A stretch of DNA of 64,000 bases. Origin: Hypanus sabinus. Lineage: Eukaryota. Shown here one piece after another: positions 2,455 to 58,339 of the stretch. The notes under the pieces were generated by a model. It ran no database searches. It was given only the letters and a program-made list of their open reading frames with translations, and was not told the origin of the DNA. The stretch lies in assembly GCF_030144855.1 (NCBI RefSeq), contig NC_082708.1:59582001-59646000 (forward strand), given 5' to 3'. Position numbers and translations under genes: made by a program. The first letter of the stretch is position 1. Each line of letters begins with the position of its first letter.

Positions 2455-3915
2455 CTCAAAGTTCAAAATAAATTTATTACCAAAGTACACACTTGTCAGC
2501 ATATACAACCCTAAGATCCATTTCCTTGTGGGTATACTAAATTAATTCACAATAGAATAATAACCACAAAAGAATAAACAAAAGACTGCTCAAACTGAGT
2601 GTTCACCAGTGTGCAAAAGACAACAAAGTGTGCAAATACAAAAACGATGAAGTAATAATAAATAAATAAATAGATAGATAGATAAATAAATAAATAAGCA
2701 AGCAAGCAATAGGTATCAAGGACATGAGATGAAGAGCCCTTGAAAGTGAATCCACAAGTTGTTGGAACATTTCAGTGATGGAGCAACTGAAGTTGAGTAA
2801 AGTTACCCCTTTGGTTCAACAGCCTGATGGTTGATGGGTAATAACTAACAAGAGAAAATCTGCAGATGTTGGAAATTCGAGCAATTCACACAAAACAGTG
2901 GAAGAACTGAGCATGCCAGGCAGCATCTATTTTTTTCCATAGATGCTGTTTGGCCTGCCGAGTTTCTCCAGCCTTCTGTGTGTGCTGAGGGGTAATAACT
3001 GTTCCTGAACCTAGTGGAATGAGCCCTGAAGCTCTATACTTTCTTCCTGATGACAGCAGCAAGAAGAGAGGACGATCTGGGTGGTAGGGGTCCCTGATTA
3101 TGGATGCTGCATTCCTTCAACAACACTCCATGTAAATGTGCACAATAGTAGGGAGGGCTTTATCCATGAGGAACTGGGCAATATCCACTACATTTTGTAG
3201 GATTTTCTGTTCAAGGGCAATGGTGTTCCCATATCAGGCTGTGATGCAGCCAGCCAGAACACTCTACACTACGCATCCATGAAAGTTTGTCAAAGTTTTA
3301 GATGTCATGCTGAATTTTCACAAACTCCTAAGGAAGTAGAGGCGCTGCAGTACTTTCTTCATAATTGCACTTACATGCTGGGCTCAGGACAGGCCCTCTG
3401 AAATAACACCGAGGAATTTAAAGTTGTTGACCCTCTCCACCTCTAAGGACTGGCTCATGGACCTTTTTGGTTTTAATGACATTGAGTAGGAGGTTGTTGT
3501 TAAGGCACCATTCAGTCTGGTTTTCAATCTCCCTTCTATATGCTGATTCATCACCACCTCTGATTCAGCCTACAAAAGTGGTGTCCTCAGCAAACTTGAA
3601 TATGGCATTGGAGCTCTGCTTAGCTACATAGTCTTGGGTGGAAAGTGAGCACAGCAGGGGGCTACGCACATAGCCTTGAGGTGCACTTGTGCTGATAGAG
3701 ATTGTGGAGGAGATGTTGCCAGTCCAAACTGACTGAGATCTGCAAGTGAAGAAATAGAGGCTCCAATTGGACAAGAAGATATTGAGGCCAAGATCTTGAA
3801 GCTCATTGATTAGTTATGAGGGGATCATAGTATTGAAAGCCAAGCTGTTATCAATAAAGAGTATCCTGATGTATGCATTTTTGCTGGCCAGATGCTCCAA
3901 GGTTGAGTAAAGAAC
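2455..3915 (-). mobile_element. Rex1/Babar-like (CR1/L2 group) LINE fragment
   Basis: RT remnant SAPQG..SPLL.SL.TQD...IFKFAEDTT (3565-3774). The (TTTGAAC)-type tail reads TCAAAGTTCAAAATAAATTTATT at about 2456. Contains a compound (AAAT)/(AGAT)/(AAGC) microsatellite at about 2656-2708. Confidence 0.75.
2847..2983. mobile_element. Fold-back mini-insertion derived from the Penelope-like pseudo-LTR
   Basis: Inverted arms CCAGGCAGCATCTAT / ATAGATGCTGTTTGG. Flanked by a 17-bp near-duplication (2830-2846 vs 2984-3000, 15/17). Confidence 0.75.
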
Positions 3916-4487
3916 CTTTCAGGGTTTAGAGTACTTGATAGATCATTTCAGATGGCAGATTAGTGAACCATGTTACTGAGTTTATTGTTGCATACAGGCC
4001 AAAATGTATAACAAATTTCTATCCATAGAGGCAGGTGAATTGCAAAAGATCTTATAGCAATTTAATACAAAATACTCAACAAAGCTCAGGATTGAAACAA
4101 TACTGATATTTCTGCCCCATAAATCATATTTTAAAAATAATGTACAAGGGGAAGTCATTCACTCCCATGTCAACTAAAAGCACAGCAACTTATGTTTATC
4201 CTCCCTTCCCTGCTCTCAACCACAACTTCCACAACTGCTTGCCCAGAAACTTTAAATATGTTGTGTTTCTACCTTCCCACTATGTCAGGCAAAGTTCCAG
4301 ATGATTACCATTCATATATACACTTCTGCATGACCTGCCTCTATTCCTCTACTTCATGTCTGGTCCAATAAATGTAAGTATGTTGCATGTCTTTTTATTC
4401 TCTACCTATCCTGTTACTTTCAGAGACTAGAGAACATATGCTGCAAGCTCTCTCTGTTCTTGTTATCCCAATGTTCATCATACATTC

Positions 4488-4696
4488 AAAATGCCGCTGG
4501 AACACAGCAGGCCAGGCAGCATCTATAGGACGAAGCACTGTCGACGTTTTGGGCTGAGAACCTCCATCCTGAGGAAGGGTCTCGGCCCGAAATGTCGACA
4601 GTGCTTCTTCCTATAGATGCTACCTGGCCTGCTGTGTTCCACCAGCATTTTGTGTGTGTTGCTTGAATTTCCAGCATCTGCAGATTTCCTCGTGTT
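4488..4696 (+). mobile_element. Fold-back Penelope pLTR mini-element with minimal hammerhead ribozyme motif
   Basis: Inverted arms of about 75 bp. CTGAGGA-A-GGGTCTCGGCCC-GAAA-TG-TC-GAC at 4569-4599. 14-bp TSD (4474-4487 vs 4697-4710, 13/14). Confidence 0.8.
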
Positions 4697-4869
4697 TTCA
4701 TTATACATTCTCTTGGTTTGTCATTCCCCCCCCCCCCCATATTACCTTAAAAATCTGAATGCTGAGTTGCATTTGCCACTTTTATACCTAGCCAACAAGT
4801 GGTATATTCTTAAGTCACAGAACTTCTTTCGACAGTGCCACTGTTGGATCAACAGCAAGCATCTTAATT

Positions 4870-13219: not shown

Positions 13220-13613
13220 AGGTGTGTCCTCCACAATGAAGACTGATGCAAACTGTCTTACAAGACTTCGGCTATTTCTACAATATCCAATATTAATTCC
13301 CCCATTTCATCTTCCAAGGGACCTATGTTCACTTTAGCCACTCTTTTCTGCATTATATAACTATATCAACTTTAAATGTCTGATTTTTGTGATAATTCAC
13401 TTTCATAATCTACCTTCCCTTATTGCTTGATTAGTGGTTCTTTGTTGCTTCTTTAAAAAGATTTCCGTATCTTCTCGTTTCCCACTACTCTTGACAACTT
13501 CCAGATTTTGCCTGAAGGTGTGGTGGAGATAAATGTTCTCACAGCATTTAAGAAATATTGCGAATAGGCATTTGAAACACTGTGACTTGGAAGGCTACAT
13601 TTTGCCTGTAACT

Positions 13614-13838
13614 CAAAACGCTGGAGGAACTAAGGGGGCCAGGCAAAGAGAAAAGAGAACAGTGGACGTTTTGAGCCTAGACCTTTCAGCATCTCTACTG
13701 AGTACTGCTGAAGGGTCTCGGCCCAAAGCGTTGACTAGATTTTTCCATAGATGCCGCCTGGCCTGCTGCATTCCCCCAGCATTTTGTGTGTGTTGCTTGA
13801 ATTTCCAGCATCTGCAGATTTCCTCGTGTTTGTGTTTG
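13614..13838 (+). mobile_element. Fold-back Penelope pLTR mini-element with decayed hammerhead motif
   Basis: CTGCTGAAGGGTCTCGGCCCAAAGCGTTGAC, with the same 3' arm as 4488-4696. Approximate 15-bp TSD (12/15). Confidence 0.7.
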
Positions 13839-14129
13839 ATATTGCCTGAAAGTCTGATTAGCATCCAGAGGTACTTTATGCCCGGCACCGATACCATGGG
13901 CTAGTTCTATGCTGCGTGATTCAAGAATTATATAAATTTGTTCACAGGCATGGCATGTAAAATAAAAATACTACTGGCAATTTCATTGTATTAGAGTATG
14001 CCATTTAAGGGCAGCATGTCAAATTGGTGGCCCGATTTTTGCAGTTAAAACGGTGATTAACATTAAAGAGAGACTTGGTGATTTTGGCTATAATTCAGCT
14101 GGGAGGATAATAAAATGTTACTAAATGTA

Positions 14130-15858: not shown

Positions 15859-16047
15859 ATGGCAAGTAATCCCTCGATGGCTGTGCTCAGTAAAGTAATT
15901 GAACAGCAAATGCTGCAAACAACAGAAATTGTTGAACAACATTTAGATACCGAGATTGAAAAATATGAAACGATGGATGGAGATGAACTGGAGAATCTCC
16001 GAGCAAGAAGACTTGAATCACTGAAGAAAGCACAACATCAGAAACAG
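15859..16047 (+). CDS. TXNDC9: Thioredoxin domain-containing protein 9 (phosducin-like 3 family), coding exon 1
   Basis: MASNPSMAVLSKVIEQQMLQTT...KKAQHQKQ matches the TXNDC9 N-terminus. Donor CAG|GT. Confidence 0.95.
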
Positions 16048-16797: not shown

Positions 16798-16916
16798 GAA
16801 TGGCTATCAAAGGGCCATGGTGAATACAGGGAGATTCCCAGTGAAAAAGATTTTTTTCAAGAGGTTAAGGAGAGTAAAAATGTGGTTTGCCACTTTTATA
16901 GGGATACGACATTTAG
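16798..16916 (+). CDS. TXNDC9: TXNDC9 coding exon 2
   Basis: [39 protein letters not shown], with AG/GT borders. Confidence 0.97.
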
Positions 16917-18555: not shown

Positions 18556-18810
18556 ATGCAAGATAGTAGACAAGCATTTGACTATTCTGGCTAAAAAACA
18601 TATTGAAACCAAGTTCATCAAATTAAATGCAGAAAAAGCTCCTTTCCTTTCTGAGAAATTACGAATCAAAATAATTCCAACAATGGTCTTAGTGAAAGAT
18701 GGGAAAGCAAAAGATTACATTGTTGGGTTTGATGACCTTGGTTGCACAGATAATTTCACTACAGAAACTTTGGAATGGAGATTGGGATGTGCTGCCATCA
18801 TTAACTACAG
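18556..18810 (+). CDS. TXNDC9: TXNDC9 coding exon 3
   Basis: [20 protein letters not shown]...[11 protein letters not shown]. Phases are consistent with neighbouring exons. Confidence 0.97.
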
Positions 18811-19226
18811 GTAGGCTTATTTTATGATGTGGATATATTGGTACATTTCATTTCTAGAATTATGTTTTTTTATCTTGAATGTATGGTTTTCAAAGAAAAT
18901 ATTCTTGACATTTTTTAACATTCACAACTTTAAGCTGATTCTAATGTATAATCTTCTTAAAAATGCTGCTTGGGGGAAGAAGCTTGATAGAATTCTGTTT
19001 TGTCAGAACCTATCCCCTTTACACCAAATAAATTATTCTGAAACTGGGCCACTGTTGTAAAGGTTAGAAAATACTATAGTCATTTTTCACATGTATGGGT
19101 CTCAGAAACATCAACAAGATGATTACTGGGTAATCTAGTTAATGTTGCAGACTGAGGGATAAATGTTAGGTCAGACACAAGGAAAATCCCTTGACCTTTT
19201 TCAAAAACAGCCATAGGATGTCAGGA

Positions 19227-19262
19227 TGTCCTGACGAAGGGTCTTGGCCCGAAACGTCGATA
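19227..19262 (+). ncRNA. Minimal type I hammerhead ribozyme motif (Penelope pLTR type) with intact core
   Basis: TGTC-CTGACGA-A-GGGT(CTTG)GCCC-GAAA-CG-TC-GATA. It lies within a 104-bp insert (19222-19325) bounded by the 9-bp TSD ATAGGATGT. Confidence 0.75.
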
Positions 19263-19444
19263 GCGCTTCTCCCTATAGAAGCTGCCTGGCCTGCTGTGTT
19301 TACCAGCATTTTGTGTGTGTTGTTGATAGGATGTTTATGTAAGTTTGCAAAGAGAACTGAAGCTATGATTTAAAATTTACATTGCCTTCCCATTTAAATG
19401 CTGTGCTTATAGCACATTTGACATATGAAAGCACTATCCTTAAG

Positions 19445-20020
19445 CCAAAGTTCCTCAGCATCCACATCACTGAGGACCTCACTTGGTCTGTACACACCAG
19501 CTCTGCTGTGAAAAAGGCACAACAGTGCCTCTTTCACCTCAGATGGTTGAGGAAGTTTGGTGTGGGCCCCCAAATCCCAAGGGCTTCCTACAGAGGCACA
19601 ATTGAGAGCATCCTGACTGGCTGCATCACTGCCTGGAATGGGAACTGTACTTCCCTCAATCGCAGTACTCTGCAGAGAGTGGTGTGGACAGCCCGGCATA
19701 TCTGTAGTTGTGAACTTCCCATGATTCAGGACATTTACAAGGATAAGTGTATAAAAAGGGCCCGTAGGATCATTGGGGACCCAAGCCATCCCAACCACAA
19801 TTTATTACAGCTGCTACCATCCGGAAGTGGTACCACACCATAAAAGCCAGGACCAGCAGGCTTCGGAGACAGTTTCTTCCACCAGGCCATCAGAATGATG
19901 AACTCAAACTGACTTGAGTGTACTCTGACTGTTACATTGACTGTTCTATTTATTATAAATTACTATGATTACACTTACTCCATGTATATGAAGGATGTAA
20001 GAAATAAAGTCAATTCAATA
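19445..20020 (+). mobile_element. Rex1/Babar-like LINE 3' fragment
   Basis: KFLSIHITEDLTWS..KKAQQCLFHLRWLRKF..YRGTIESILTGCITAW, followed by an AATAAAGTCAATTCAAT tail. Confidence 0.85.
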
Positions 20021-20169
20021 ATTGGCAGATTGTACAATACAAACAAATACTCCAACAAATGACTGGATATCCTATTATTGACCTGCTATTTTCTCACCAA
20101 AATCTGCAGTAATTTTACACTCCAGACTCCTTTGCCACTTGCCTATGGCTACCCAACTTATTTAAAATG

Positions 20170-22100
20170 TTGAGCACCACACAGTGCTGGAGGAACTCAG
20201 CAGGTCAGGCAGCATCTATGGAGGAAAATTAACAGTTGACATGTCAGGCTGAGATCCTTGATGAGCACTGTAAAGAAATAAGCAGGGCCAAATTTCAAGG
20301 GTGGGAGAGAGCAAGGAGCATGAGCGGGCAGATGGCAAGTGAACCCAGGTGCGAGGGGGAAGATGGGATGTGAGGTGGGAAGGAACAATGTTAGAAACTG
20401 GGAGGTAATAGGTGAAAGATGCAAAGGATAAAAGGTGAAGAAGGAATAGGATGGGAGAGTATACTAGACCATGGAATAAAGGGAAGAAGACAACCAAGGT
20501 GAAATATGTAGTGTTATTCATTCTATCTGTGTTTGGGCTCAAAGTGGCAGTATGGGATCAGGAAGTGGGATTGAAATGATTGACCACTGGGAAATCCTGG
20601 CCAATCTGCATCAGGTCTCACAAATGTATCTGGCTGCACTGGGAGAACAGGATACAAATAATTGACTTTAATGGATTTGCACGTGAAGTTCTACCTCACC
20701 TGGAAAGACTATTTAAGACTCTGCGTGGTGGTGAAGGAGGTGGTGTAGCTGCAGGTATAAAAGCACAATTGTAGGGATGAGTACTTAGACGGGATCATTG
20801 GAGAGGAATGAATGGACAAGAAGAGAGTGATCCTGGGGGGGAGGGGAAGATGTGCCTGGTGTTGGCATCTCATTGGAGATGACGGATGTTGCGGATAATG
20901 ATGGGTTTGATGCAAAGGTTCGTGCGATGGTAGGTGAGAGAATGGGCAGAGTGGGGATGGGGCGGTAAAAGGAGAAGTGTGTGAGGGCTGTTTTGATAGG
21001 GAGGGGAAACCCCATTTTCTGGGGGGGGGTGAAGAAGGACATGTCCGAGCATGGAAATCCTCATCAAGAGAACAGATATGCAAAGACAGAAGAACTGTGA
21101 CAAGAACTTGCAACTTGCAACCTTGCAAGTGACAGTGTGGGAAGAGGTGTGGTCAATGTAACTGAGTCAGTAGGTTTTTATAAAAGATAGTAGAGACAGA
21201 TCAACAAAGGGGAGAGAGTTGTCAAACATGGCACAGGTAAATTTGAAGGTGGAGTAGAAGCTGGTGAGATTGACAGGCTCTGCATGGGTGCCGGAAGCAG
21301 CATCAATGCAGCCATCAGTGTAGCAAAAAGTTAGGGAGCATTACCAGTTTAGGTTTCTAACATGCATTGTTCTATGTAGCCAATGAAAAGACAGAATTGG
21401 GACCCATGCGGGTGTGAAAGCTACACCTTTCATCTGGAGAAAGTGGGAGAAGTGGTTCAGGGCAAGTACCAGGTTTGCCAAATGAACGAAGGAAGGTGGT
21501 GGTGGTGAGGGGAACTGTAATAATAATAGAAAAGCAGAGACTGTTGAGGCCTTCCTGCTGGAGAATAGAAGTGTTCAGGGACTGGATGTCTGGTGAAAAT
21601 GAGGCAAACAGCTGTAGGGAACTGAAAGTTGTTGGAAGTACAGGAGAGCATGCAAAGTGTCATGGATGTAAATAGGAAGGGACTGAGCTAAGACAGGACA
21701 AAATGAAGTCGCCATACAAGGAGGTAAGTTCGGTGGGGCAGGAGCAGTGTGCTTACTGGTGCAGTTAGGTTTGTAGAACTTGGGTAGGAAATAGAAATGT
21801 GCAGTGCGAGGTAGGGAAACTGAGGCGGGAGTCTGTGGAAGGGAGGTCTCTCAAGGTAACGAAGTCAGTGCCAGTGCGGGGGACGGTGGTCTGATGCTTC
21901 TCAACAGGGTCCTGATTCAGGGATAAGTAAGAGGAGGTATGGGAGAGCTGTGATCTGGTTGTCAGACTGCAACAGCACTGTCTTTATCGCAAATTTGGTA
22001 AGTTTGGGATTAGTAAGGAGAGAGAGGAGCAGTGCATTCACAGGGCGAGATACTGGTGTAGGTGAGTGGAATTGTGAAGAGATCTCAGCAGTTTGAGATG
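20170..22100 (-). mobile_element. Penelope-like retroelement, degenerate
   Basis: RT relics IFT.DIQSLNTSI (about 21570) and QMKGVA..TRMGP (about 21410). The pLTR with a decayed hammerhead lies at 20170-20270. Confidence 0.75.
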
Positions 22101-22227
22101 AAAAGTCTTTTCCACCAAACACAGGCATTACTCTAATAGTGTATAATATAACCTCCAAGCAGAAATTGTCATTGAACTTTAAAAGAACACATTAAAATCA
22201 ACTAAAGTCTGACTGTTTTCTTCTTAG

Positions 22228-22342
22228 CGGAAATTTGATGGACCCACCTTTCCAGATGCAAAAAAAATGTGGAAACATCACAAAGATGGAGAAAAGGACA
22301 ATTAGAGGAAAGAACAATGATTCTGATTCAGATGATGATTAG
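22228..22342 (+). CDS. TXNDC9: TXNDC9 final coding exon
   Basis: GNLMDPPFQMQKKCGNITKMEKRTIRGKNNDSDSDDD-stop. AATAAA at 22429-22434. Confidence 0.96.
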
Positions 22343-25300
22343 ATTGTTAAGCATATTTCTTAATCCACACAACCTTTTATTCTTATGTATTGTTAAATTT
22401 TAATTTCAGTAATTAATTTTCATAGCCTAATAAAAAATTATTGCAATGCAAATTAGTGACTTGGAGAATGTTACCTGTTAGACAGAGGATTAGAATATTA
22501 GCTCCATGAATGAAACTTTAAATCTGTTTTGCTCCAGTAGCATTCTTTTAAGGATGGTTTATTCAGAACATTTGTAGACATTGAAGGGAATCAGCAAACT
22601 GTACGGAAGGGAATATACAGGGTTGCTGGGAGTATTGATGTTGCTTCTCAAGCTCTTCTGACTTTAGTAATTGGCCTTTTGGCCTCCATATCATCCTGTA
22701 GACTCCCAAATCCTTGGTACATTCTCAGATGTGTTCCTGCCACTTTGTGTAATTGTGGATTAGGGATTACTGCCTATCATCAAGAAGGTTTTGAGGTAGC
22801 GATGTTTGCATAATGTTCAGCAACATTTGCAACTCAAGTAGTGAAACAGTCTGTTTTGAATGTAACAAGACCTCAACACCCAGGCCTGAGCTAATGCATT
22901 GCAAGTAACTTTTGCAACACACAAGTGCCAGGCATGACTATATCCAACAAGAGAAAATCCAGTTATCACCCCCTGACATTCAGTGGAATTACTATCACTG
23001 ACTTGTCTGCTTAATTAGGTTACTATTAACTAGAAACTCAAGTGGAGTAACTGCATACACTATGTGGCTACAAGAGCAGGTCAGAAGCTAAGAAGTCTGT
23101 GACAATTAACTCTCCACCTCATTCTCCAAAACGTGTCCACCGTCAATGAGGCTCAAGTTAGGAGTGTGATGAAATAATCTCTCCTGGCCCAAAGAGGCTC
23201 AAGATCACACTGAACATTGTAGCCTACTTCAGAGGCACCCCATCCACACTCATTTGCTAACTCCACCAGCAACATGTAGTGGTAGCAGTATGTATCTTCT
23301 ACAGGTTGTACTGTAGAAATTCAGCAAGACTCCTTAGATAGCATCAAAATCCACAACCTCTACCTGCTAGAAGGACAAGGGCAACAAGTACATGGGAGCA
23401 GCACCACCTCCAAGTTGCCTTCCAAGTCACACCATCCTTCATCACTGCGGGGTGAAAATCCTGAAACTCTCTCCAAAAGCACACCTTAGGAACTGCAACA
23501 GTTCAAGAAGGTAGTGTACCATCACCTTCAAGGGCAACTAGGAATGGGCAATTAAATGCTGGCTCAGCTTGTGAAGCCCCCGTCCTCTGAATATTTTTTA
23601 AAAAGTAATTTCTGAGTATGCTTGAATCGTATGCTGCATGCTGGAGTTCTTGGTTCAGGCATGCAAAAAATGCAGTCGATCAAAGTTGGTCATGCCTGAG
23701 CATTGCTGTGGTGTTTGCCTGAGAAAGGATGCAGCTGTAGCTTTGAAGAATTTTATGAAGGCAATATTGGTGTTACCTTAATGCCTTTGAGATACCTTCT
23801 ACAAGTTATGGATCACTGGTGCACTGTAGATTGCAAGATTGATGCTGGTTTTGGTGCATCACTGATGCCTGTCATGCATATGAGTTGACTCCTGAGATAT
23901 GTAGCATATTCCACATTCAAGTTTCTCTCCATGGATCGTGCCCGTCAGGGGCAGCACAGTGTCCTGCAGCAGAGGCAGATAGTGAACATTTGGTCAGCAC
24001 CAAATCCATTATGATCATTAATCACTAACTTTGAACCCCTCTCCAACCACAAGGCTTCAGTTTTATTGTGCTTAAGCACAAGATGAGCTTCTGACAACTG
24101 GTACACACGATCAGCGATCTCCAGTTCTGTCTTACGCTCACTTTAAGTACTGCTTAAAGATGCTACTTACTGTTAAACATAGATGTAGCTGGTTTTCTGC
24201 ACTAGTAAACCAGACCACTTAATTCTACCTCTTTGACCTATCCACAAATCTTATTCACAAACATGTTGGGTTAAGCAACATACAATACTAATCTTTCAAA
24301 TCTCTAATCCTTTAATACAACAGGTAAGCACACTCAAATTTTGGTTTCATCATTTCTGCCCCTATAAAGGCCTTGAGTTATCAAATTCCCTTCTGAAGTC
24401 TCTACCTAACTACTATGGGAGACTGTGCATGATCTTGAAACACTAGTAGTAGTTTAATACAGTAAGCTTAATCATTTTGGTACCAAGCAATTATATTGGC
24501 CATGTTAGTAGCATGTATCCTTCTCCAAGGAAGATTAATGAAACAAATTAAGTTTATTTTAGCAATACTGTCAGATTTGAATGTTCCTTATTTCCAAAAA
24601 TTTTCTGAACTCAACCCCCAAACAAGTCAAAATCTGCATTGAGTGTTTACCCTATTTCATGTTATACTGTACATTGTTTTTGCTGCAGTTTTACATAATA
24701 ATCACTTCTGCTTGTATTTGAGTGACAGCTTCAGACAGGCATTTGTATCTCTGGGCATGTGAGAAAGACAACTATCCATCCATTTTCAACACAGTGTTGA
24801 AGTGCTGGCATTGACTGACTACATAGTGAAATGCAATACCAATGTAACTATTAATATTACACTAAATTTTGCTGGAAGTGTTTAATATGCATATTAATTT
24901 ATCCAGCATTTGTAATTTCCACAAGTATATAGACTAATTATTTTATTCCATTTTAAAGCTTATTAAATTAGTACCTCAATGTAAGATTCATTATATTTTT
25001 GAATTGATGTTATTTGATCACAAATTTAGAGCTGCTAATTAAAAACATACTTGCACTTGTAGGTGATTTACAACCAAAGCTGATTTATATGCTGGAAATA
25101 TCATTCATGATCTCCACTCCAGAAAGGGAACACCCTTGCCCGAATTTAAATGTTAAATTGCTTTGCAAAGTATCATTTTTTTCTGTCCTGATTTAACTCA
25201 ATTTCCATCTGTTACCTTCTCAATCTTTAAAGTGTGATTGTTCAATTCCATCATTTGCCATGTTGTCCTAGCCAGAATGTTAATTGTCTGCACTTTAAAC

Positions 25301-32108: not shown

Positions 32109-33559
32109 CTGGAAAAACAAAGTAAGTTTTGAAGTAGTTAATTTACTTCATGCAACAAATTAAAATGTGATGTTAGCTTCCTGGGGTCCATGGAACATTC
32201 CAAATAAATGGAAGTTGCAAAAGTGGTTGACAAAACTGCCTTAATTTTAAATAGGTGGGTAATATAACCACAGTTAAATTTTTTTAAGATTTAACTGTTT
32301 GAAATAATACTATTCGGTCCCCATCCAGCTCAGTAGCCATGATCTGATATCTGATCTAGTAAATCAAGAGAATGATTGTAGGATAAATTGGCAATGGATT
32401 ACAGGGAGGCGATGTCTAAAACCTGAATGTGTTTCATGTCTGACATTTCTGTACAATGATAATTACCAATTATTGATCCCCAAATACCACTCTCATAACT
32501 GATTCTTCAATGAGTTCAGGAAAGTTTTCTTTAGAAATATGTAGCTGGAAGTGAGACTGGGCAGGTGCTAAAGTGTCAGTAGGAAAGTGCTCATTCTGGG
32601 ACCAGTGAACATAATTGTTACTTTCAGAACAGTTACAGAAAAAAATACTGCTTCCACGCAGTCTAGCTCTATGCACATCATCTCAATATTATGTAAATTT
32701 ATTTGCTAGATTGCATCTATTCTGATTCATGGAGTTCTGCCTGACATTTCATCAAGAACCCTTGCTTGTGACATTTAAAACATTTTACAGCACAGTACTG
32801 ATGAGCTTGAACTAAGTGTTTCCAATGTCAACAAAGCCATTTGTGAATGCAAGAAAACAATCTCGTTAATAGAAATAACCACTCAATTGTTGGAAATTGA
32901 AAAATTATAACAGGGTTTTCAAGCATTCCCATTTGTGCATATACAACCCACACTCCATGTTGAAATTCTTATAATTTTACGTTCTGTTGGTCTTTGAACT
33001 ACATTTGTTAATCTTCCTCGGTTTTTCAGTTTTTTTTTCGTAAATGTTGTTAACCTGCATAATCATTTGAGTATTATATTATGCAGGTTTGGTAACTTAG
33101 CCATTGGTCCACAAATTAACCTTCTCAGATAACAATCAAAAATATATGCCAATGACAGGTTTTTGATATCACCATCTTCCCAATATTTAAGCAAGATTCC
33201 TACACTTAATTCTTCACAAATTTTGAAGTAGCTTTGCAATTTGTTTAATAATTCAATGTGTATGAGAATTGTATGCTTCAATGTCTATTAACAAGATCAT
33301 TTTCCTACATTCACAAGTGGCTTCATAAGCAGCATCTTGCCCTTCTGTTAATAATGTAGTTTGCTGGCTTATGACTCCAAATTTTACGGCGCTATGTTCT
33401 TCACTACCTCATTCTCGGGACTTACGTTTTCTGTGGGTACTTTAACATGCAACTAAGACCCATTAAAAAGTATAGAATCAAACACCCGATACCCAAGCAG
33501 TTCAAAAGCTGGTGGTAGGGACCCAATACCCAACAAAAGTGTGTAATATCAAATCACAG

Positions 33560-33742
33560 ACAAGAGAAATTCTGCAGATGCTGGAAATCTGAGCAACACA
33601 CACAAAATGCCGAGGAACTCTGCAGGCCAGCTTGCACCTATGGGGAAAAAAAGGACTCCTGCCGAAGGGTTCTGGCCCAAAACGTTGACTGCACTTTTTC
33701 CATAGATGCTGCCGAGTTCCTCCAGCATTTTGTGTCTGTTGC
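33560..33742. mobile_element. Fold-back Penelope pLTR mini-element with decayed hammerhead motif
   Basis: Inverted arms around CTGCCGAAGGGTTCTGGCCCAAAACGTTGAC. Confidence 0.7.
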
Positions 33743-34206
33743 GTGTAGGATTAGCATGTTTTGGATATAAAGTTTAAATATTTTGAATTCATGCCTCTGA
33801 AAATGGTGCTGACTTCGAAATAACCACGTTGTCAATAACAGTTTTTCTGCAAGCAACAATGATTCTAACGATCAGCAAGGTGAAACCGGTGCATCGAGGG
33901 AGACCCATGTGGTCGCAAAGAGAAACGGACAAACCTCCTTACTGAGGCCAGATTTGAACATGGGCTGGTGGAACTCGAAGGCCTTGGCTCGGTTACTAGC
34001 ACAGGGTGTACAAGCACTAAGACACTGAACATAATTACCTTCACTCAACATTTATGGAAGTAAAACATCATTTATTTTTGTAAGTACATACTGTCCTCTT
34101 GAGAATACGTTTAAAAAACACAATGGCACATAAAATACTCAGGCAGGAGAACCGAGACTCCATTACGGTTTCGCACAGCAAAAGAAGGCCACAGTGTGAA
34201 ACTTAC

Positions 34207-42807: not shown

Positions 42808-44670
42808 ACATAAAATGCTGGAGAAACTTAGCAAGTCAGGCAGCATCTATGAAAAGGAATAAATTCTGAACTTGTGTCTGTACATCTTGACTCCATTTTA
42901 TCCCCTTCAGTCCCTTCTCATAAACAGCTACATCCATGACATTTCACACATTCTCGATTTCTCCAACAACTTTCAGTTCCCTGCTCCTGATTGCCTCATT
43001 TTCACCATGGATGTCCAATCCCTATACCCCTCTATCCCCCCCCATCAAGAAGGCCTTAAAGCCCTCCAACTTCTTTATCAACTCCAGATTCAACCAGCTC
43101 CCATCCAGCACCTCCCTCCTCTATCTGGCAGAACTGGTCTTCCCACTCAACAATTTCTCTTTTGGCTCCTCCCACTTTCTCCAAACCCAAGGTGTAGCCA
43201 TCGGCAACCACATGGGCCCCAGCTATCTCTGCCATTTCATTGGCTATGTGGAACAGTCCATGTTCCTAGCATTTACTGCTAGTGCTCCCCAACTCTTTCT
43301 GTGCTACACCGACAACTGCATTGGTGCTGTTTCATGCTCCCATGCTGAGCTCATCAATTTCATCAACTTTGCCTCCAACTTCCATCGTCCTTAAATTCAT
43401 TTGATCAGCTTCGAAAATCTCTTTCCATTCTCTCAATCTGTCCATTTCCATTTCTAGGGACAAACTGCCTTTTAGAAATCTACTGATTGTCACAGCTGTC
43501 TTTTGACTATACTTCTTCCTACCCAGTCACCTGTAAAAATGCCATTCCCTTTTCTCAATTCCTTCATCTCCACTGCATCTGCCCTCAATGAGACTTCCTT
43601 TCCAGGACATCAGAGATTTCCTCCTCCTTCAATGAACAGGGTTTCCTTTTGTTGTCCACCATTGATGCTGCCCTCACCTGCATCTCCTGAATTTCCTGGA
43701 CATCCACCCTAACCTCATCTTCCCACTGCATTAACAGTGATAGATTTTCTCATTCTTTTCTACCACCCTATGAGCCTCCCCATCCAGCACTTCTTTCTCT
43801 GCAACTTCCACCACCTTCAATGGGATCCTAACACATCTTTACTCCCTTTCCCCTCAACTCTCTGCTTTCCTTGGGAGTCTTTTTCTCCATGATTCCCTCC
43901 CCACCACTCTCCTCCCAGCCCTTATCCCTGCAAGCAGAAGAAGTGCTCACTTGTATATCCACCTCCCCCATCCCCTACATTCAGGGCCCAAACCATCCTT
44001 CCAGGTGCAAATCCGTTGAGGTAGTTTACTGTATCTGGTGCTCCCAATGTACTCTCCTCTACATCGGTGGCACCCAGTGTAGATCGGGAGACTGCTTTGT
44101 CAAGCACTTTCATTCCATCCACAACAACCAAGATTTCCTGGTGGCCAACCATTTTAATTCCAATCCCTATTTCAATTCCAATATGATGGTCCATGGCCTC
44201 CTCTAATGCAAAGATGAGGCCACTTTCAGGTTAGATGAGCAACACCTCATTCCATCTGGGTAGCTTCCACCCTGAAGGCATGAATATTGATTTCTCTAGC
44301 TTCTGTTAATTTTCCCCCTGCCCCTCTTCCATTCTCCACTCTGGCTGCCCTCTTACCTCTTCTCTTCTCTTCACATGCCTATCACTTCACCCTGGTGCAC
44401 CTCCTCCTCTTTCTCCCATGGTCCATTCTCCTCTCCTATCAAGTTCCTTCTTCTTCAGCACTTTACCTTTTCCACCTATCACATCCCAGCTTCTCACTGC
44501 ATCCCCTCCTCCCCCACCTTCTTATTTGACTTCTTCCCCCTTCCATTCCAGCCTGATGAAGGGTCTCAGCTGAAACATTGACTGGTTTTCCATTCCACAG
44601 ATGCTGCCTGACTTGCTGTTTCTCCAGCATTTTGTGTGTTGCTGTGGATAAACAGCATCTACATAATTTT
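42808..44670 (+). mobile_element. Penelope-like retroelement (RT plus GIY-YIG endonuclease), 5'-truncated, with inverted 5' pLTR piece
   Basis: FTMDVQSLYPSIP, QGVAIGNHMGPSY and VVYCIWCSQCTLLYIG. 3' pLTR with CTGATGAAGGGTCTCAGCTGAAAC at 44553. About 16-bp TSD (13/16). Confidence 0.88.
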
Positions 44671-56578: not shown

Positions 56579-57361
56579 CTATTTATATCGGACTAGACGA
56601 AGTACCTTGTAATTCATGAAATCAGAGGAATCTGGCTGTAGTGAATCTACATGGAATCCATCACTCATTGCTGTTTTTAGCACTTCCTCCACAAACAACT
56701 GAAAGTTATTAACTTGCTCATTTGTAGGCACAATCCAAAGTCTTTTTAAATGTTGCTTTGTGTATTCATCTTCAGGCAGCACTGCCACATGTCCAACCCA
56801 CTGTAATGTCAAATGGTGTGGATCCTTTATCTCATAGCCAATTGGTAAAAGTTTACCGTTAACAAAGTAACAAAACTTGGAGCTCAAATACTTCAAGAAT
56901 TCAGCTGATGTGCAAAATATGTTGGCATCAAAGACCTCTGTACTACATGAGGTTAGGTTGTACATTTGTGGGGCTGGTTTAACAGTGAAGTACACAGTCT
57001 GCAGTCTCTGGTCCAGAGTAATGTTGAGCATTGCATTCCTTTCCGCCTTGGCAATTTCAGACTCTCTCTCCTGTAAAGCCTCGATTAAAGGCTGGATCTG
57101 GTAAAAGTCAGCTTCTCTCTTCAAAAGCCTAACTTCTTGAAAATCATCTGGGAGGTCGAGGTTTGATGTGCGCAAAAAATTTAGAATATATCGAAATATT
57201 TTCCCATCTCTGTCAATGAAGTAATTACCGTGCTGATCACTAGTTGAGGGCATTTTCCCACTGAACATTACACCCAGCATCGAGTCTGGATATCGTGTTA
57301 AAGTTGCCAGAGAACTGGTATACAATTTTCCTCCTACATTTAATGTTATAGGCTCAGACAT
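56579..57361 (-). CDS. KCTD21: BTB/POZ domain-containing protein KCTD21 (single coding exon, 260 aa)
   Basis: [49 protein letters not shown] polypyrimidine tract and acceptor at 57398-57397 exclude the upstream ORF extension. Minus-strand AATAAA at 56167-56162. Confidence 0.92.
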
Positions 57362-58339
57362 ATTGAATTGATACTGTAATCTTAATTTCCTATAATCTGT
57401 GTCACAGAAGGAGACAAAAAGAGAAAAAGATTTTATGAAACAGTACTTAATGCAAAGATCAAACATACTCCGCACCACACATAAAGTACTGTTTCTAGCC
57501 TCCATACATTTTTTCCTTTTATGTGAATGCTTTGTTTCTTTATTTTATTGGCAACAACATATAGAATGATTTATTTTCCCAACATAGCTGGAAGGATAAG
57601 AGATCGGTTTTGTTGCAGATACCATCTTACATGGCTGATAATGTTGAACACCTCTTCTAATTTTGCAGAGCATTCTTATATTATGAAATGATTAACTAAA
57701 GGAGGACATTTGGAAAAAGGGAATGCAAGTTTCAATATCGGTAAAGGAGGGAATACATTTTGCCGAAAAGGTTGACATAACTAAGGAAATGTTAGATTGA
57801 ATGTGGTTGGAATTAAAGTTATCTTTATATATTATCAGATTGTGGTAAGGAAATAAGAGAGGAACTCTGTGGTCAGATTACACACAGAGGAATTACTACA
57901 GAGACACGTGATTGCAGATGCTGGAAAATAGAGTAAAATAATAACCACTGTAATAACTCAGCAGAATGAGCAACATTCTTCGAAGTAAAGGTTGCATGGA
58001 GCGTCTCAACCTGAGATGTTAATCAAAATTATTATAGTCAGTTTTAATTATTGATTTGACCACTGGTACAGAATTTAAATAGAGAAAAAGAAGAAAGAGG
58101 AATAGAATTTCAAAAGATGCAAAAGCTTCTACTTTAAGCCAATAAGGTGGCAGGGCTGGGTCTCATTTTGAATTATTGAAAAGATGAGGCTGAATATGAA
58201 ACAAGGAAAATCATTCTCCAAATCATGGTCACTACTTGATCAAAGTCAAAACAGACTAGTTCACAATACTTTTTAAATGGGTGAGCAGCTAACTAGGGCA
58301 TAGTGAAAAAAGAAATTGTCACTAAGTACCGACAATTCT

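What the first reader, a model, noticed from the sequence alone, without database searches (positions are those of the whole stretch)
19213..19334. Intact minimal hammerhead ribozyme in the sense strand of a TXNDC9 intron
Seen: helix I UGUC/GAUA, core CUGACGA, helix II GGGU/GCCC with a 4-nt loop, GAAA, palindromic ACGU in place of helix III, and GUC cleavage triplet (predicted cut after 19258). The 104-bp insert has a perfect 9-bp TSD (ATAGGATGT at 19213 and 19326) and starts at a small inversion (TCAGGA-TG-TCCTGA). An antisense pLTR lies about 900 nt downstream (20170-20270) and could pair with it. Known: such minimal hammerheads cleave mainly as dimers. Inference: a latent self-cleaving site in a housekeeping pre-mRNA, possibly activated in trans by Penelope transcripts.
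Basis: partly seen in the sequence, partly recalled or inferred. Interest (0 to 1): 0.7.

Follow-up and report, generated by a model that had tools for sequence, protein, structure and literature searches.

The report
Penelope retrotransposon stub with hammerhead motif
The hammerhead ribozyme motif is really there and looks intact. It sits in a 104-bp dead-end stub of a common Penelope-like jumping gene lodged in an intron, a known kind of sequence that most likely does not cut the host RNA.

Summary
Observation confirmed. A 104-bp insert (19222-19325) between perfect 9-bp duplications carries a complete minimal type-I hammerhead, with predicted cut after 19258. A min-HHR descriptor hits only this site in the window and none of 300 shuffles.

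It belongs to a repeat family with 13 arms at 9 loci in the window. One copy ends a decayed RT + GIY-YIG element, so the family is the 3' end of a Penelope-like element (PLE). The family shows PLE hallmarks: an optional ~36-nt 3' tail, variable TSDs and head-to-head inverted insertions inside single TSDs. The insert lies sense, 411 nt into the last intron of a 225-aa TXNDC9-like gene.

The "latent, trans-activated self-cleaving site" reading is not supported:
- There is no helix III in cis and no second sense hammerhead in the coding span.
- Predicted folds bury the core in a -9.5 kcal/mol hairpin.
- The double-hammerhead fold scores -12.5 against -31.7 kcal/mol for the dimer optimum.
- The antisense copy 850 nt downstream has a dead core and would mask the motif in a ~96-nt duplex.
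- Published PLE min-HHRs cleave poorly even as tandem dimers.

The scan met such stubs before on other DNA of this genome (s1-187801). This is an ordinary new member of a known kind.

The parts
19213..19221 (.). Left target-site duplication ATAGGATGT
   Evidence: Read directly; best flanking direct repeat found by script.
19222..19325 (+). 104-nt insert: tail-less 3'-terminal stub of a Penelope-like element, sense to the host gene
   Evidence: 89% identical to copy 4567-4661 and 64-82% to the other arms. Same family as the 3' end of the RT + GIY-YIG remnant at 42872-44668.
19227..19262 (+). Minimal type-I hammerhead. Helix I 19227-30/19259-62, core 19231-37, bulged A 19238, helix II hairpin 19239-50, GAAA 19251-54, palindromic ACGU 19254-57, C17 at 19258 (predicted cut 19258/19259)
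   Evidence: [quoted passage not shown]
19220..19235 (+). Competing hairpin GUCAGG-AUGU-CCUGAC that sequesters core positions C3-C7. It is created by the tandem 8-mer AGGATGTC x2 (19215-19230) at the 5' junction
   Evidence: -9.5 kcal/mol, z -3.95. It is present in the MFE fold of 19213-19270, which makes up 62% of the ensemble.
19326..19334 (.). Right target-site duplication ATAGGATGT
20178..21452 (-). Antisense Penelope-like remnant in the same intron. Its 3' end (20178-20276) is the family copy, with a decayed hammerhead (CUCAUCA, GACA)
   Evidence: Collinear homology to the 42872-44668 element: 20390-20503 matches 44386-44497 and 21245-21452 matches 43166-43382.
18811..22227 (+). Intron 3 (the last intron) of the TXNDC9-like gene. 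Coding exons are 15859-16047, 16798-16916, 18556-18810 and 22228-22342
   Evidence: Splice sites and frames read directly. Pfam Thioredoxin at E 2e-6. Phosducin-like hits in the PDB and the Atlas. The name TXNDC9 rests on my recollection of the human protein.
42872..44668 (+). 5'-truncated Penelope-like element: RT motifs 42872-43394, GIY-YIG remnant within ORF 43871-44206, pLTR with decayed hammerhead near 44553, tailed 3' end at 44668
   Evidence: The RT piece finds 1117 relatives. Of nine long relatives scanned, eight carry a C-terminal GIY-YIG hit and eight an RVT_1 hit at E<=0.001, several below Pfam's own cut-off. BLASTP to P0100: residues 483-599 at E 6e-26 and residues 822-886 at E 6e-9.
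4482..4700 (.). Head-to-head inverted pair of the same family: a tail-less arm on the - strand and a tailed arm on the + strand. The right arm has a near-intact hammerhead (CUGAGGA...GAAA-UGUC)

Best explanation
The feature is the 3'-terminal stub of a Penelope-like retrotransposon (PLE).

How it got there (inferred from published PLE biochemistry). The element's reverse transcriptase primed on a nicked target in the intron. It started at the upstream (tail-less) of the two internal RT start sites of the PLE RNA and copied about 100 nt back through the hammerhead. The cDNA then ended or was joined just 5' of helix I, leaving a 9-bp target-site duplication.

What is shown. The hammerhead is the normal pLTR min-HHR of the element, carried along passively. 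Its core happens to be undamaged, and the perfect TSD is consistent with a recent insertion, though age was not measured.

What it does in the host (inferred). As a lone copy in TXNDC9-like pre-mRNA it has no helix III and no sense partner. It is predicted to fold into inactive alternatives or to pair with the antisense PLE remnant 850 nt downstream. It therefore most likely does not cleave, and it leaves with the spliced-out intron.
For: Motif and TSD:
- Read directly and beyond chance.

Repeat family:
- 9 matches to a 22-mer against 0 expected.
- 13 arms at 9 loci.

PLE identity, shown inside the window:
- Family copy 44547-44668 lies about 250 nt after a decayed RT + GIY-YIG ORF whose full-length relatives combine RVT_1 with a C-terminal GIY-YIG domain.

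PLE hallmarks in the family:
- An optional ~36-nt 3' tail is present in 5 of 13 arms, matching the two RT start sites and the 30-40-bp tail described in PMC11167929.
- TSDs of 7-11 bp.
- Four head-to-head inverted pairs, three of them with a candidate flanking TSD of 11, 8 or 7 bp. This is consistent with cleavage and extension of both target strands (PMC11167929) and with oppositely oriented dual min-HHRs (PMC4209133).

Inactivity:
- In the 41-nt construct, the monomer hammerhead-like fold scores -6.8 against a monomer MFE of -10.8, and the double-hammerhead -12.5 against a dimer MFE of -31.7 kcal/mol.
- A core-sequestering hairpin is present in 62% of the ensemble.
- A 96-nt duplex with the antisense copy scores -108 kcal/mol.
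- The other arms in the window have broken cores, or a non-palindromic spacer in 4613+.
- Published single min-HHRs show no cleavage and dimers only low cleavage (PMC4209133).
- No arm starts at the cleavage site, so the templates were uncleaved, as PMC11167929 also found.
Against: - No experiment was possible. Nearest-neighbour energies ignore tertiary contacts and protein chaperoning.
- The core is fully intact, and helix I of this copy (UGUC / GAUA) would be compatible in trans with the family's GACA / UGUC strands. A heterodimer with an abundant PLE transcript is therefore structurally possible.
- The exact 5'-junction mechanism, with its 8-nt tandem repeat, is not explained.
- The age and fixation status of the insertion are unknown.
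Confidence: 0.88

Rival explanations
1. One reading: a latent self-cleaving site in the pre-mRNA. It becomes active when a second hammerhead RNA (a PLE transcript), or the PLE protein, is supplied in trans, so that transposon activity is coupled to TXNDC9 output.
For: - The core is intact.
- The palindromic ACGU allows a 4-bp helix III in trans, and helix I strands are compatible with the family's strands.
- The PAc hammerhead cleaves only with its protein present (PMC11167929).
Against: - A bimolecular complex held by three 4-bp helices scores -12.5 kcal/mol, against two folded monomers at about -21.6.
- A competing hairpin buries the core, and an intramolecular duplex with the antisense copy would mask it.
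- Published activity is low even for tandem dimers (PMC4209133).
- In PAc the protein-binding region lies within the first 172 nt of the ORF, whereas only 67 nt follow the cut site here (PMC11167929).
- From my own knowledge (Fong et al. 2009), slow ribozymes placed in introns do not outcompete splicing.
Confidence: 0.04
2. It is not a randomly truncated PLE but a discrete short unit. Either it is a non-autonomous pLTR-derived element (a retrozyme monomer or SINE-like cassette). Or it is a run-off cDNA made when RT starts at the initiation site near the 5' end of a pLTR-initiated transcript.
For: - Earlier notes on this genome report many stand-alone ~100-110-bp units with their own TSDs (s1-187801, s1-216738; unchecked).
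- In the window, several arms begin within a few nt of the hammerhead's 5' edge, at q7-14 of the insert.
- Animal retrozymes are reported to derive from pLTRs (bioRxiv 10.64898/2026.07.22.740005).
Against: - The window sample is small, and other arms begin at q46-54 or extend more than 1 kb upstream.
- No tandem head-to-tail repeats of the unit were seen in the window.
- This rival concerns only how the stub was made, not what it does.
Confidence: 0.07
3. A chance hammerhead-like string with no relation to ribozymes.
For: Rfam models give no hit even at E<=10.
Against: - 0 of 300 shuffles satisfy the descriptor.
- The motif is homologous, position for position, to the family's hammerhead, and it belongs to a PLE.
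- Rfam hammerhead models appear to require a cis helix III (my recollection), which min-HHRs lack by design.
Confidence: 0.01

Closest known systems
Minimal hammerhead ribozymes (min-HHR) in the pLTRs of metazoan Penelope-like elements (Cervera & De la Pena 2014, PMC4209133; Lunse et al. 2017, cited in PMC6765202)
   Same: - Type-I topology, a short helix I of 4 bp, and an unpaired nucleotide between A9 and G10.1.
- A G10.1-C11.1 closing pair, no helix III, and palindromic 15.2-16.2.
- Thousands of dispersed single copies, mostly in truncated PLEs, with pairs on opposite strands.
   Different: - Helix II here is 4 bp rather than the 6-8 bp typical of Schistosoma or Drosophila min-HHRs.
- The host is a cartilaginous fish, for which my literature searches found no published sequence.
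Poseidon PLE of Anolis carolinensis (PAc), with internal RT initiation and a 'tail' (Frangieh et al. 2024, PMC11167929)
   Same: - The hammerhead lies a few tens of nt upstream of the element's genomic 3' end.
- There are two classes of 3' ends differing by a ~36-nt tail.
- Insertions carry the uncleaved hammerhead.
- The fold-back pairs are consistent with extension from both target strands.
   Different: - The 3' end here is 67 nt (tail-less) or about 103 nt (tailed) after the cut site, against 85-92 nt in PAc.
- The start region is GU-rich, not AC-rich.
- No biochemistry exists for this family.
Conserved intronic hammerheads of amniotes (Rfam HH9, HH10)
   Same: A type-I hammerhead in the sense strand of an intron of a protein-coding gene.
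   Different: As I recall them, those have a stable cis helix III and loop-loop tertiary contacts, are conserved across species and are active as monomers. This one has none of these, and Rfam finds no match.
Animal non-LTR retrozymes (Cervera & de la Pena 2020, PMC7229834; bioRxiv 10.64898/2026.07.22.740005)
   Same: Short non-coding units that carry a hammerhead and are related to PLE pLTRs. Monomers are dispersed, and in Xenopus about 43% overlap introns.
   Different: Retrozymes are tandem head-to-tail repeats that give rise to circRNAs. This is a single unit with a TSD and no tandem partner.

Membership tests
Hammerhead ribozyme (type I) | Conserved core C3-U4-G5-A6-N7-G8-A9, G12-A13-A14, A15.1/U16.1, and H17 not G | tested here: met
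   CUGACGA 19231-37, GAAA 19251-54, U 19257, C 19258.
Hammerhead ribozyme (type I) | Helices I and II flank the core, with a G10.1-C11.1 closing pair | tested here: met
   Helix I is UGUC/GAUA (4 bp, one G-U). Helix II is GGGU/GCCC with loop CUUG. One bulged A follows A9, a variant recorded for PLE min-HHRs (PMC4209133).
Hammerhead ribozyme (type I) | Helix III formed in cis, giving a three-way junction | tested here: not met
   Only A15.1-C-G-U16.1 is present, so no hairpin is possible. Helix III could form only between two molecules.
Hammerhead ribozyme (type I) | Match to curated covariance models (the Rfam hammerhead families) | tested here: not met
   No match at gathering threshold over the window or at E<=10 over 19150-19400.
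Hammerhead ribozyme (type I) | Self-cleavage 3' of H17 | not testable with these tools
   This needs in vitro transcription or mapping of RNA ends. Thermodynamic predictions disfavour the active fold.
PLE min-HHR (dimer type) | No or very short helix III with a palindromic 15.2-16.2, an unpaired nucleotide between 9 and 10.1, and a short helix I | tested here: met
   compared with the consensus described in PMC4209133.
Penelope-like element | RT followed by a GIY-YIG endonuclease in one ORF | tested here: met
   Not present in the 104-nt stub itself. Met for the family: 42936-43394 and 43871-44206 align collinearly to the RT and GIY-YIG parts of P0100, and the family repeat follows at 44547-44668.
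Penelope-like element | Optional 30-40-bp tail at the 3' end in a fraction of copies | tested here: met
   A ~36-nt extension is present in arms 4613+, 13747+, 2909-, 33649- and 44597+. It is absent in the other eight arms, including this insert.
Penelope-like element | Variable TSDs, 5' truncation, and inverted or partial-tandem arrangements | tested here: met
   TSD candidates of 9, 11, 8 and 7 bp. Four head-to-head pairs, three with a flanking TSD candidate.
Non-LTR retrozyme | Head-to-tail tandem repeats of the hammerhead unit | tested here: not met
   This is a single unit. No direct repeats were found in the intron, and all multi-arm loci in the window are inverted, not tandem.

The most novel reading that the evidence does not exclude
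A young sense-strand PLE stub with an intact min-HHR is cleaved in vivo when PLE protein or PLE RNA is abundant. Bursts of Penelope expression would then cut the last intron of the TXNDC9-like pre-mRNA and lower its output. Alternatively, the sense/antisense PLE pair forms an intronic dsRNA that recruits editing or silencing machinery.
Probability: 0.03. Interest if true: 0.6.

Novelty: new member of a known kind. Interest (0 to 1): 0.12.

Why it matters
On its own it matters little. Minimal hammerheads in truncated Penelope-like elements occur by the thousands in non-mammalian vertebrate genomes, introns included, and were described in 2014.

Its use is as a clean, datable example:
- It has a perfect TSD and an uncleaved hammerhead.
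- Its 3' end is tail-less.

Together with the fold-back pairs in the same window, it fits the internal-initiation, both-strands model of PLE integration proposed from Anolis biochemistry. It also extends that pattern to a cartilaginous fish.

If such a motif ever did cleave host pre-mRNA, it would be a new route by which transposon activity affects host genes. Nothing here supports that.

Tried and rejected
- Rfam gave no match at gathering threshold or at E<=10 locally. I did not take this as evidence against a min-HHR, because to my recollection those models require a cis helix III.
- Exact-pattern scans of viral contigs and of metagenome contigs, twice, found no outside copies of the hammerhead or of the conserved 22-mer.
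- A full-text search for family sequence strings found no paper. Lunse et al. 2017 is not held.
- Pfam on the decayed PLE ORFs gave nothing even at E<=10. The search for homologous proteins on the GIY-YIG piece gave nothing. The exhaustive HMMER search on the RT piece then solved it.
- A regex search for GIY-YIG motifs missed the decayed remnant.
- I rejected the idea that the antisense copy could act as a dimer partner, because it is the complement and its core is dead.
- I rejected the idea that the TCAGGA-TG-TCCTGA inversion is a true short inverted arm. Six nt cannot reach an RT start site. It is better described as a by-product of the 8-nt tandem repeat AGGATGTC x2 at the 5' junction, whose origin remains unexplained.
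- The search of earlier findings by sequence returned nothing.

Full report
**Observation**

- A 9-bp direct repeat ATAGGATGT (19213-19221 and 19326-19334) brackets a 104-nt insert (19222-19325).
- Inside the insert are helix I (UGUC 19227-30 with GAUA 19259-62), the core CUGACGA (19231-37) and one extra A (19238).
- Next come helix II (GGGU-CUUG-GCCC, 19239-50), GAAA (19251-54), the palindrome ACGU (19254-57) and the cleavage triplet GUC, with C17 at 19258.
- The exact core pattern occurs once in the window against 0 expected.
- A broader min-HHR descriptor that I wrote hits only this site on both strands, and none of 300 dinucleotide-preserving shuffles.
- Rfam reports nothing, at gathering scores or at E<=10 on the local 251 nt. 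I expected this for a hammerhead with no helix III in cis.

**Host gene**

Four coding exons on the + strand give a 225-aa protein: 15859-16047, 16798-16916, 18556-18810 and 22228-22342, with canonical AG/GT boundaries.
- The third exon scores as Thioredoxin in Pfam (E 2e-6).
- It resembles phosducin-like proteins in the PDB and the Atlas.
- The translation matches what I recall of human TXNDC9 (PhLP3) nearly residue for residue. The name rests on that recollection.
- The insert lies in the sense orientation, 411 nt into the last intron (18811-22227).

**The insert is a repeat**

A 22-mer from its 3' half has 9 matches in the window against 0 expected. blastn finds 13 arms at 9 loci (alignments).

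Five arms carry an extra ~36 nt beyond the GT-rich 3' end where this insert stops. Those arms are 4613+, 13747+, 2909-, 33649- and 44597+. The other eight, including this insert, lack the extension.

Four loci are head-to-head inverted pairs: 2844-2987, 4482-4700, 13611-13840 and 33548-33745.
- Each pair has one tailed and one tail-less arm.
- Three pairs have a flanking direct-repeat candidate. The 11-bp repeat (GGGTAATAACT) is clear. The 8-bp and 7-bp candidates are short, and the 8-bp one overlaps an arm end.

**The family is the 3' end of a Penelope-like element (PLE)**

This can be shown inside the window.
- Copy 44547-44668 follows, on the same strand, two decayed ORF pieces.
- The piece at 42936-43394 finds 1117 relatives in an exhaustive HMMER search.
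- Of nine long relatives scanned, eight carry a C-terminal GIY-YIG hit and eight an RVT_1 hit at E<=0.001, several below Pfam's own cut-off.
- That piece aligns to residues 483-599 of P0100 (E 6e-26). The piece at 43871-44206 aligns to residues 822-886, inside P0100's GIY-YIG domain (E 6e-9).
- RT followed by GIY-YIG is the defining architecture of PLEs (PMC4209133, PMC11167929).

**Comparison with the literature**

Cervera & De la Pena (PMC4209133) described this kind of motif in PLE pLTRs.
- It is present in thousands of mostly solitary copies, "probably related to truncated PLEs", sometimes as pairs on opposite strands.
- It is found in fishes, coelacanth, amphibians and reptiles.
- Single motifs showed no cleavage in vitro, and dimers or trimers only low cleavage.

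Frangieh et al. (PMC11167929) studied an Anolis PLE.
- Reverse transcription starts at two adjacent internal sites shortly downstream of the hammerhead, and the 30-40 bp between them is the optional genomic "tail".
- Both target strands are cleaved and extended.
- Uncleaved RNA is the main template.
- The hammerhead cleaves only with the element's protein present.

The window's family fits all of this. It has two 3'-end classes about 36 nt apart, and fold-back pairs of which three have candidate flanking TSDs. No arm begins at the cleavage site, which is position 38 of the insert.

I therefore read the insert as a TPRT product that started at the tail-less site and stopped just 5' of helix I. 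This mechanism is inferred from the published system. It is not shown for this family.

**Will it cut the host RNA?**

All the evidence I could compute says probably not.
1. There is no helix III in cis.
2. No other sequence in the window meets the hammerhead descriptor. The only near-intact copy (4613+) lies 11 kb upstream of the start codon. The remaining arms have broken cores.
3. For the 41-nt core region, the hammerhead-like monomer fold scores -6.8 against an MFE of -10.8 kcal/mol. The designed double-hammerhead scores -12.5 against -31.7 for the best dimer.
4. In genomic context, a hairpin GUCAGG-AUGU-CCUGAC (19220-19235; -9.5 kcal/mol, z -3.95) buries C3-C7. It is part of a fold that makes up 62% of the ensemble. 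An 8-nt tandem repeat (AGGATGTC x2, 19215-19230) at the 5' junction creates this hairpin.
5. The antisense remnant in the same intron is the complement of the motif, not a second ribozyme. Together they can form a ~96-nt imperfect duplex covering the whole hammerhead, at -108 kcal/mol against -49 +/- 6 for shuffles. That would mask the motif, not activate it.

Nearest-neighbour energies ignore tertiary and protein effects, so this is an argument, not proof.

**What remains possible**

The helix I strands of this copy are compatible in trans with the family's strands, and ACGU is self-complementary. A heterodimer with an abundant PLE transcript is therefore not structurally excluded, and protein-assisted cleavage has precedent. 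I put this at about 3-4%.

A second open point is how the roughly 100-nt stubs arise. Several arms begin within a few nucleotides of the hammerhead's 5' edge. Earlier notes on this genome describe many stand-alone ~100-110-bp units. They could be run-off cDNAs from an RNA 5' end rather than random truncations. The window is too small a sample to decide.

**Earlier work in this scan**

The same kind of stub was noted and followed up on other DNA of this genome (s1-187801), with the same verdict as mine. Fold-back PLE insertions inside one TSD were also noted before (s1-216734, s1-213532). I confirmed the fold-back pattern independently on this window's copies.

**Verdict**

The Penelope and dimer-type identification is right. 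The functional inference is unsupported. This is a new member of an already described kind and of low interest.

Noticed in passing
window 2844-2987, 4482-4700, 13611-13840, 33548-33745: Four head-to-head inverted pairs of the hammerhead-bearing PLE end. Each has one tailed and one tail-less arm (4 of 4). Three have a flanking direct-repeat candidate of 11, 8 or 7 bp. This suggests that the two target strands are primed from different RT start sites.
   Followed up: partly
window 19215-19230: The 8-mer AGGATGTC is repeated in tandem exactly at the 5' junction, overlapping the TSD. If one copy is removed, the TSD overlaps the start of the element by 3-4 nt (TGT/ATGT), as at a microhomology junction. 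The origin of the duplication is unexplained.
   Followed up: partly
window 19264-19344: The insert supplies a pyrimidine tract plus AG (cttctccctatag|A, 19276/19277) in the sense orientation. A perfect GTAAGT begins at 19339 in the flanking intron. A 62-nt cryptic exon is conceivable, but no expression data were available.
   Followed up: no
window 19382-19843: A stop-free stretch on both strands lies just downstream of the insert. The + frame hits Pfam PF09004 (E 3e-8). From my recollection this family often marks LINE ORF2 tails in fish genomes, so it is probably a LINE fragment.
   Followed up: no
window 56579-57505 (-): An intact 308-aa intronless ORF with BTB_2 and KCTD11/21 C-terminal domains (E 5e-69): a KCTD11/21-like gene.
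   Followed up: partly
window 20277-21452 (-) and 44287-44546 (+): The pLTR region upstream of the hammerhead is strongly pyrimidine-rich on the element's sense strand. GC skew is +0.21 on the + strand over 20001-24000. About 115 nt of it is shared between the two long copies.
   Followed up: partly
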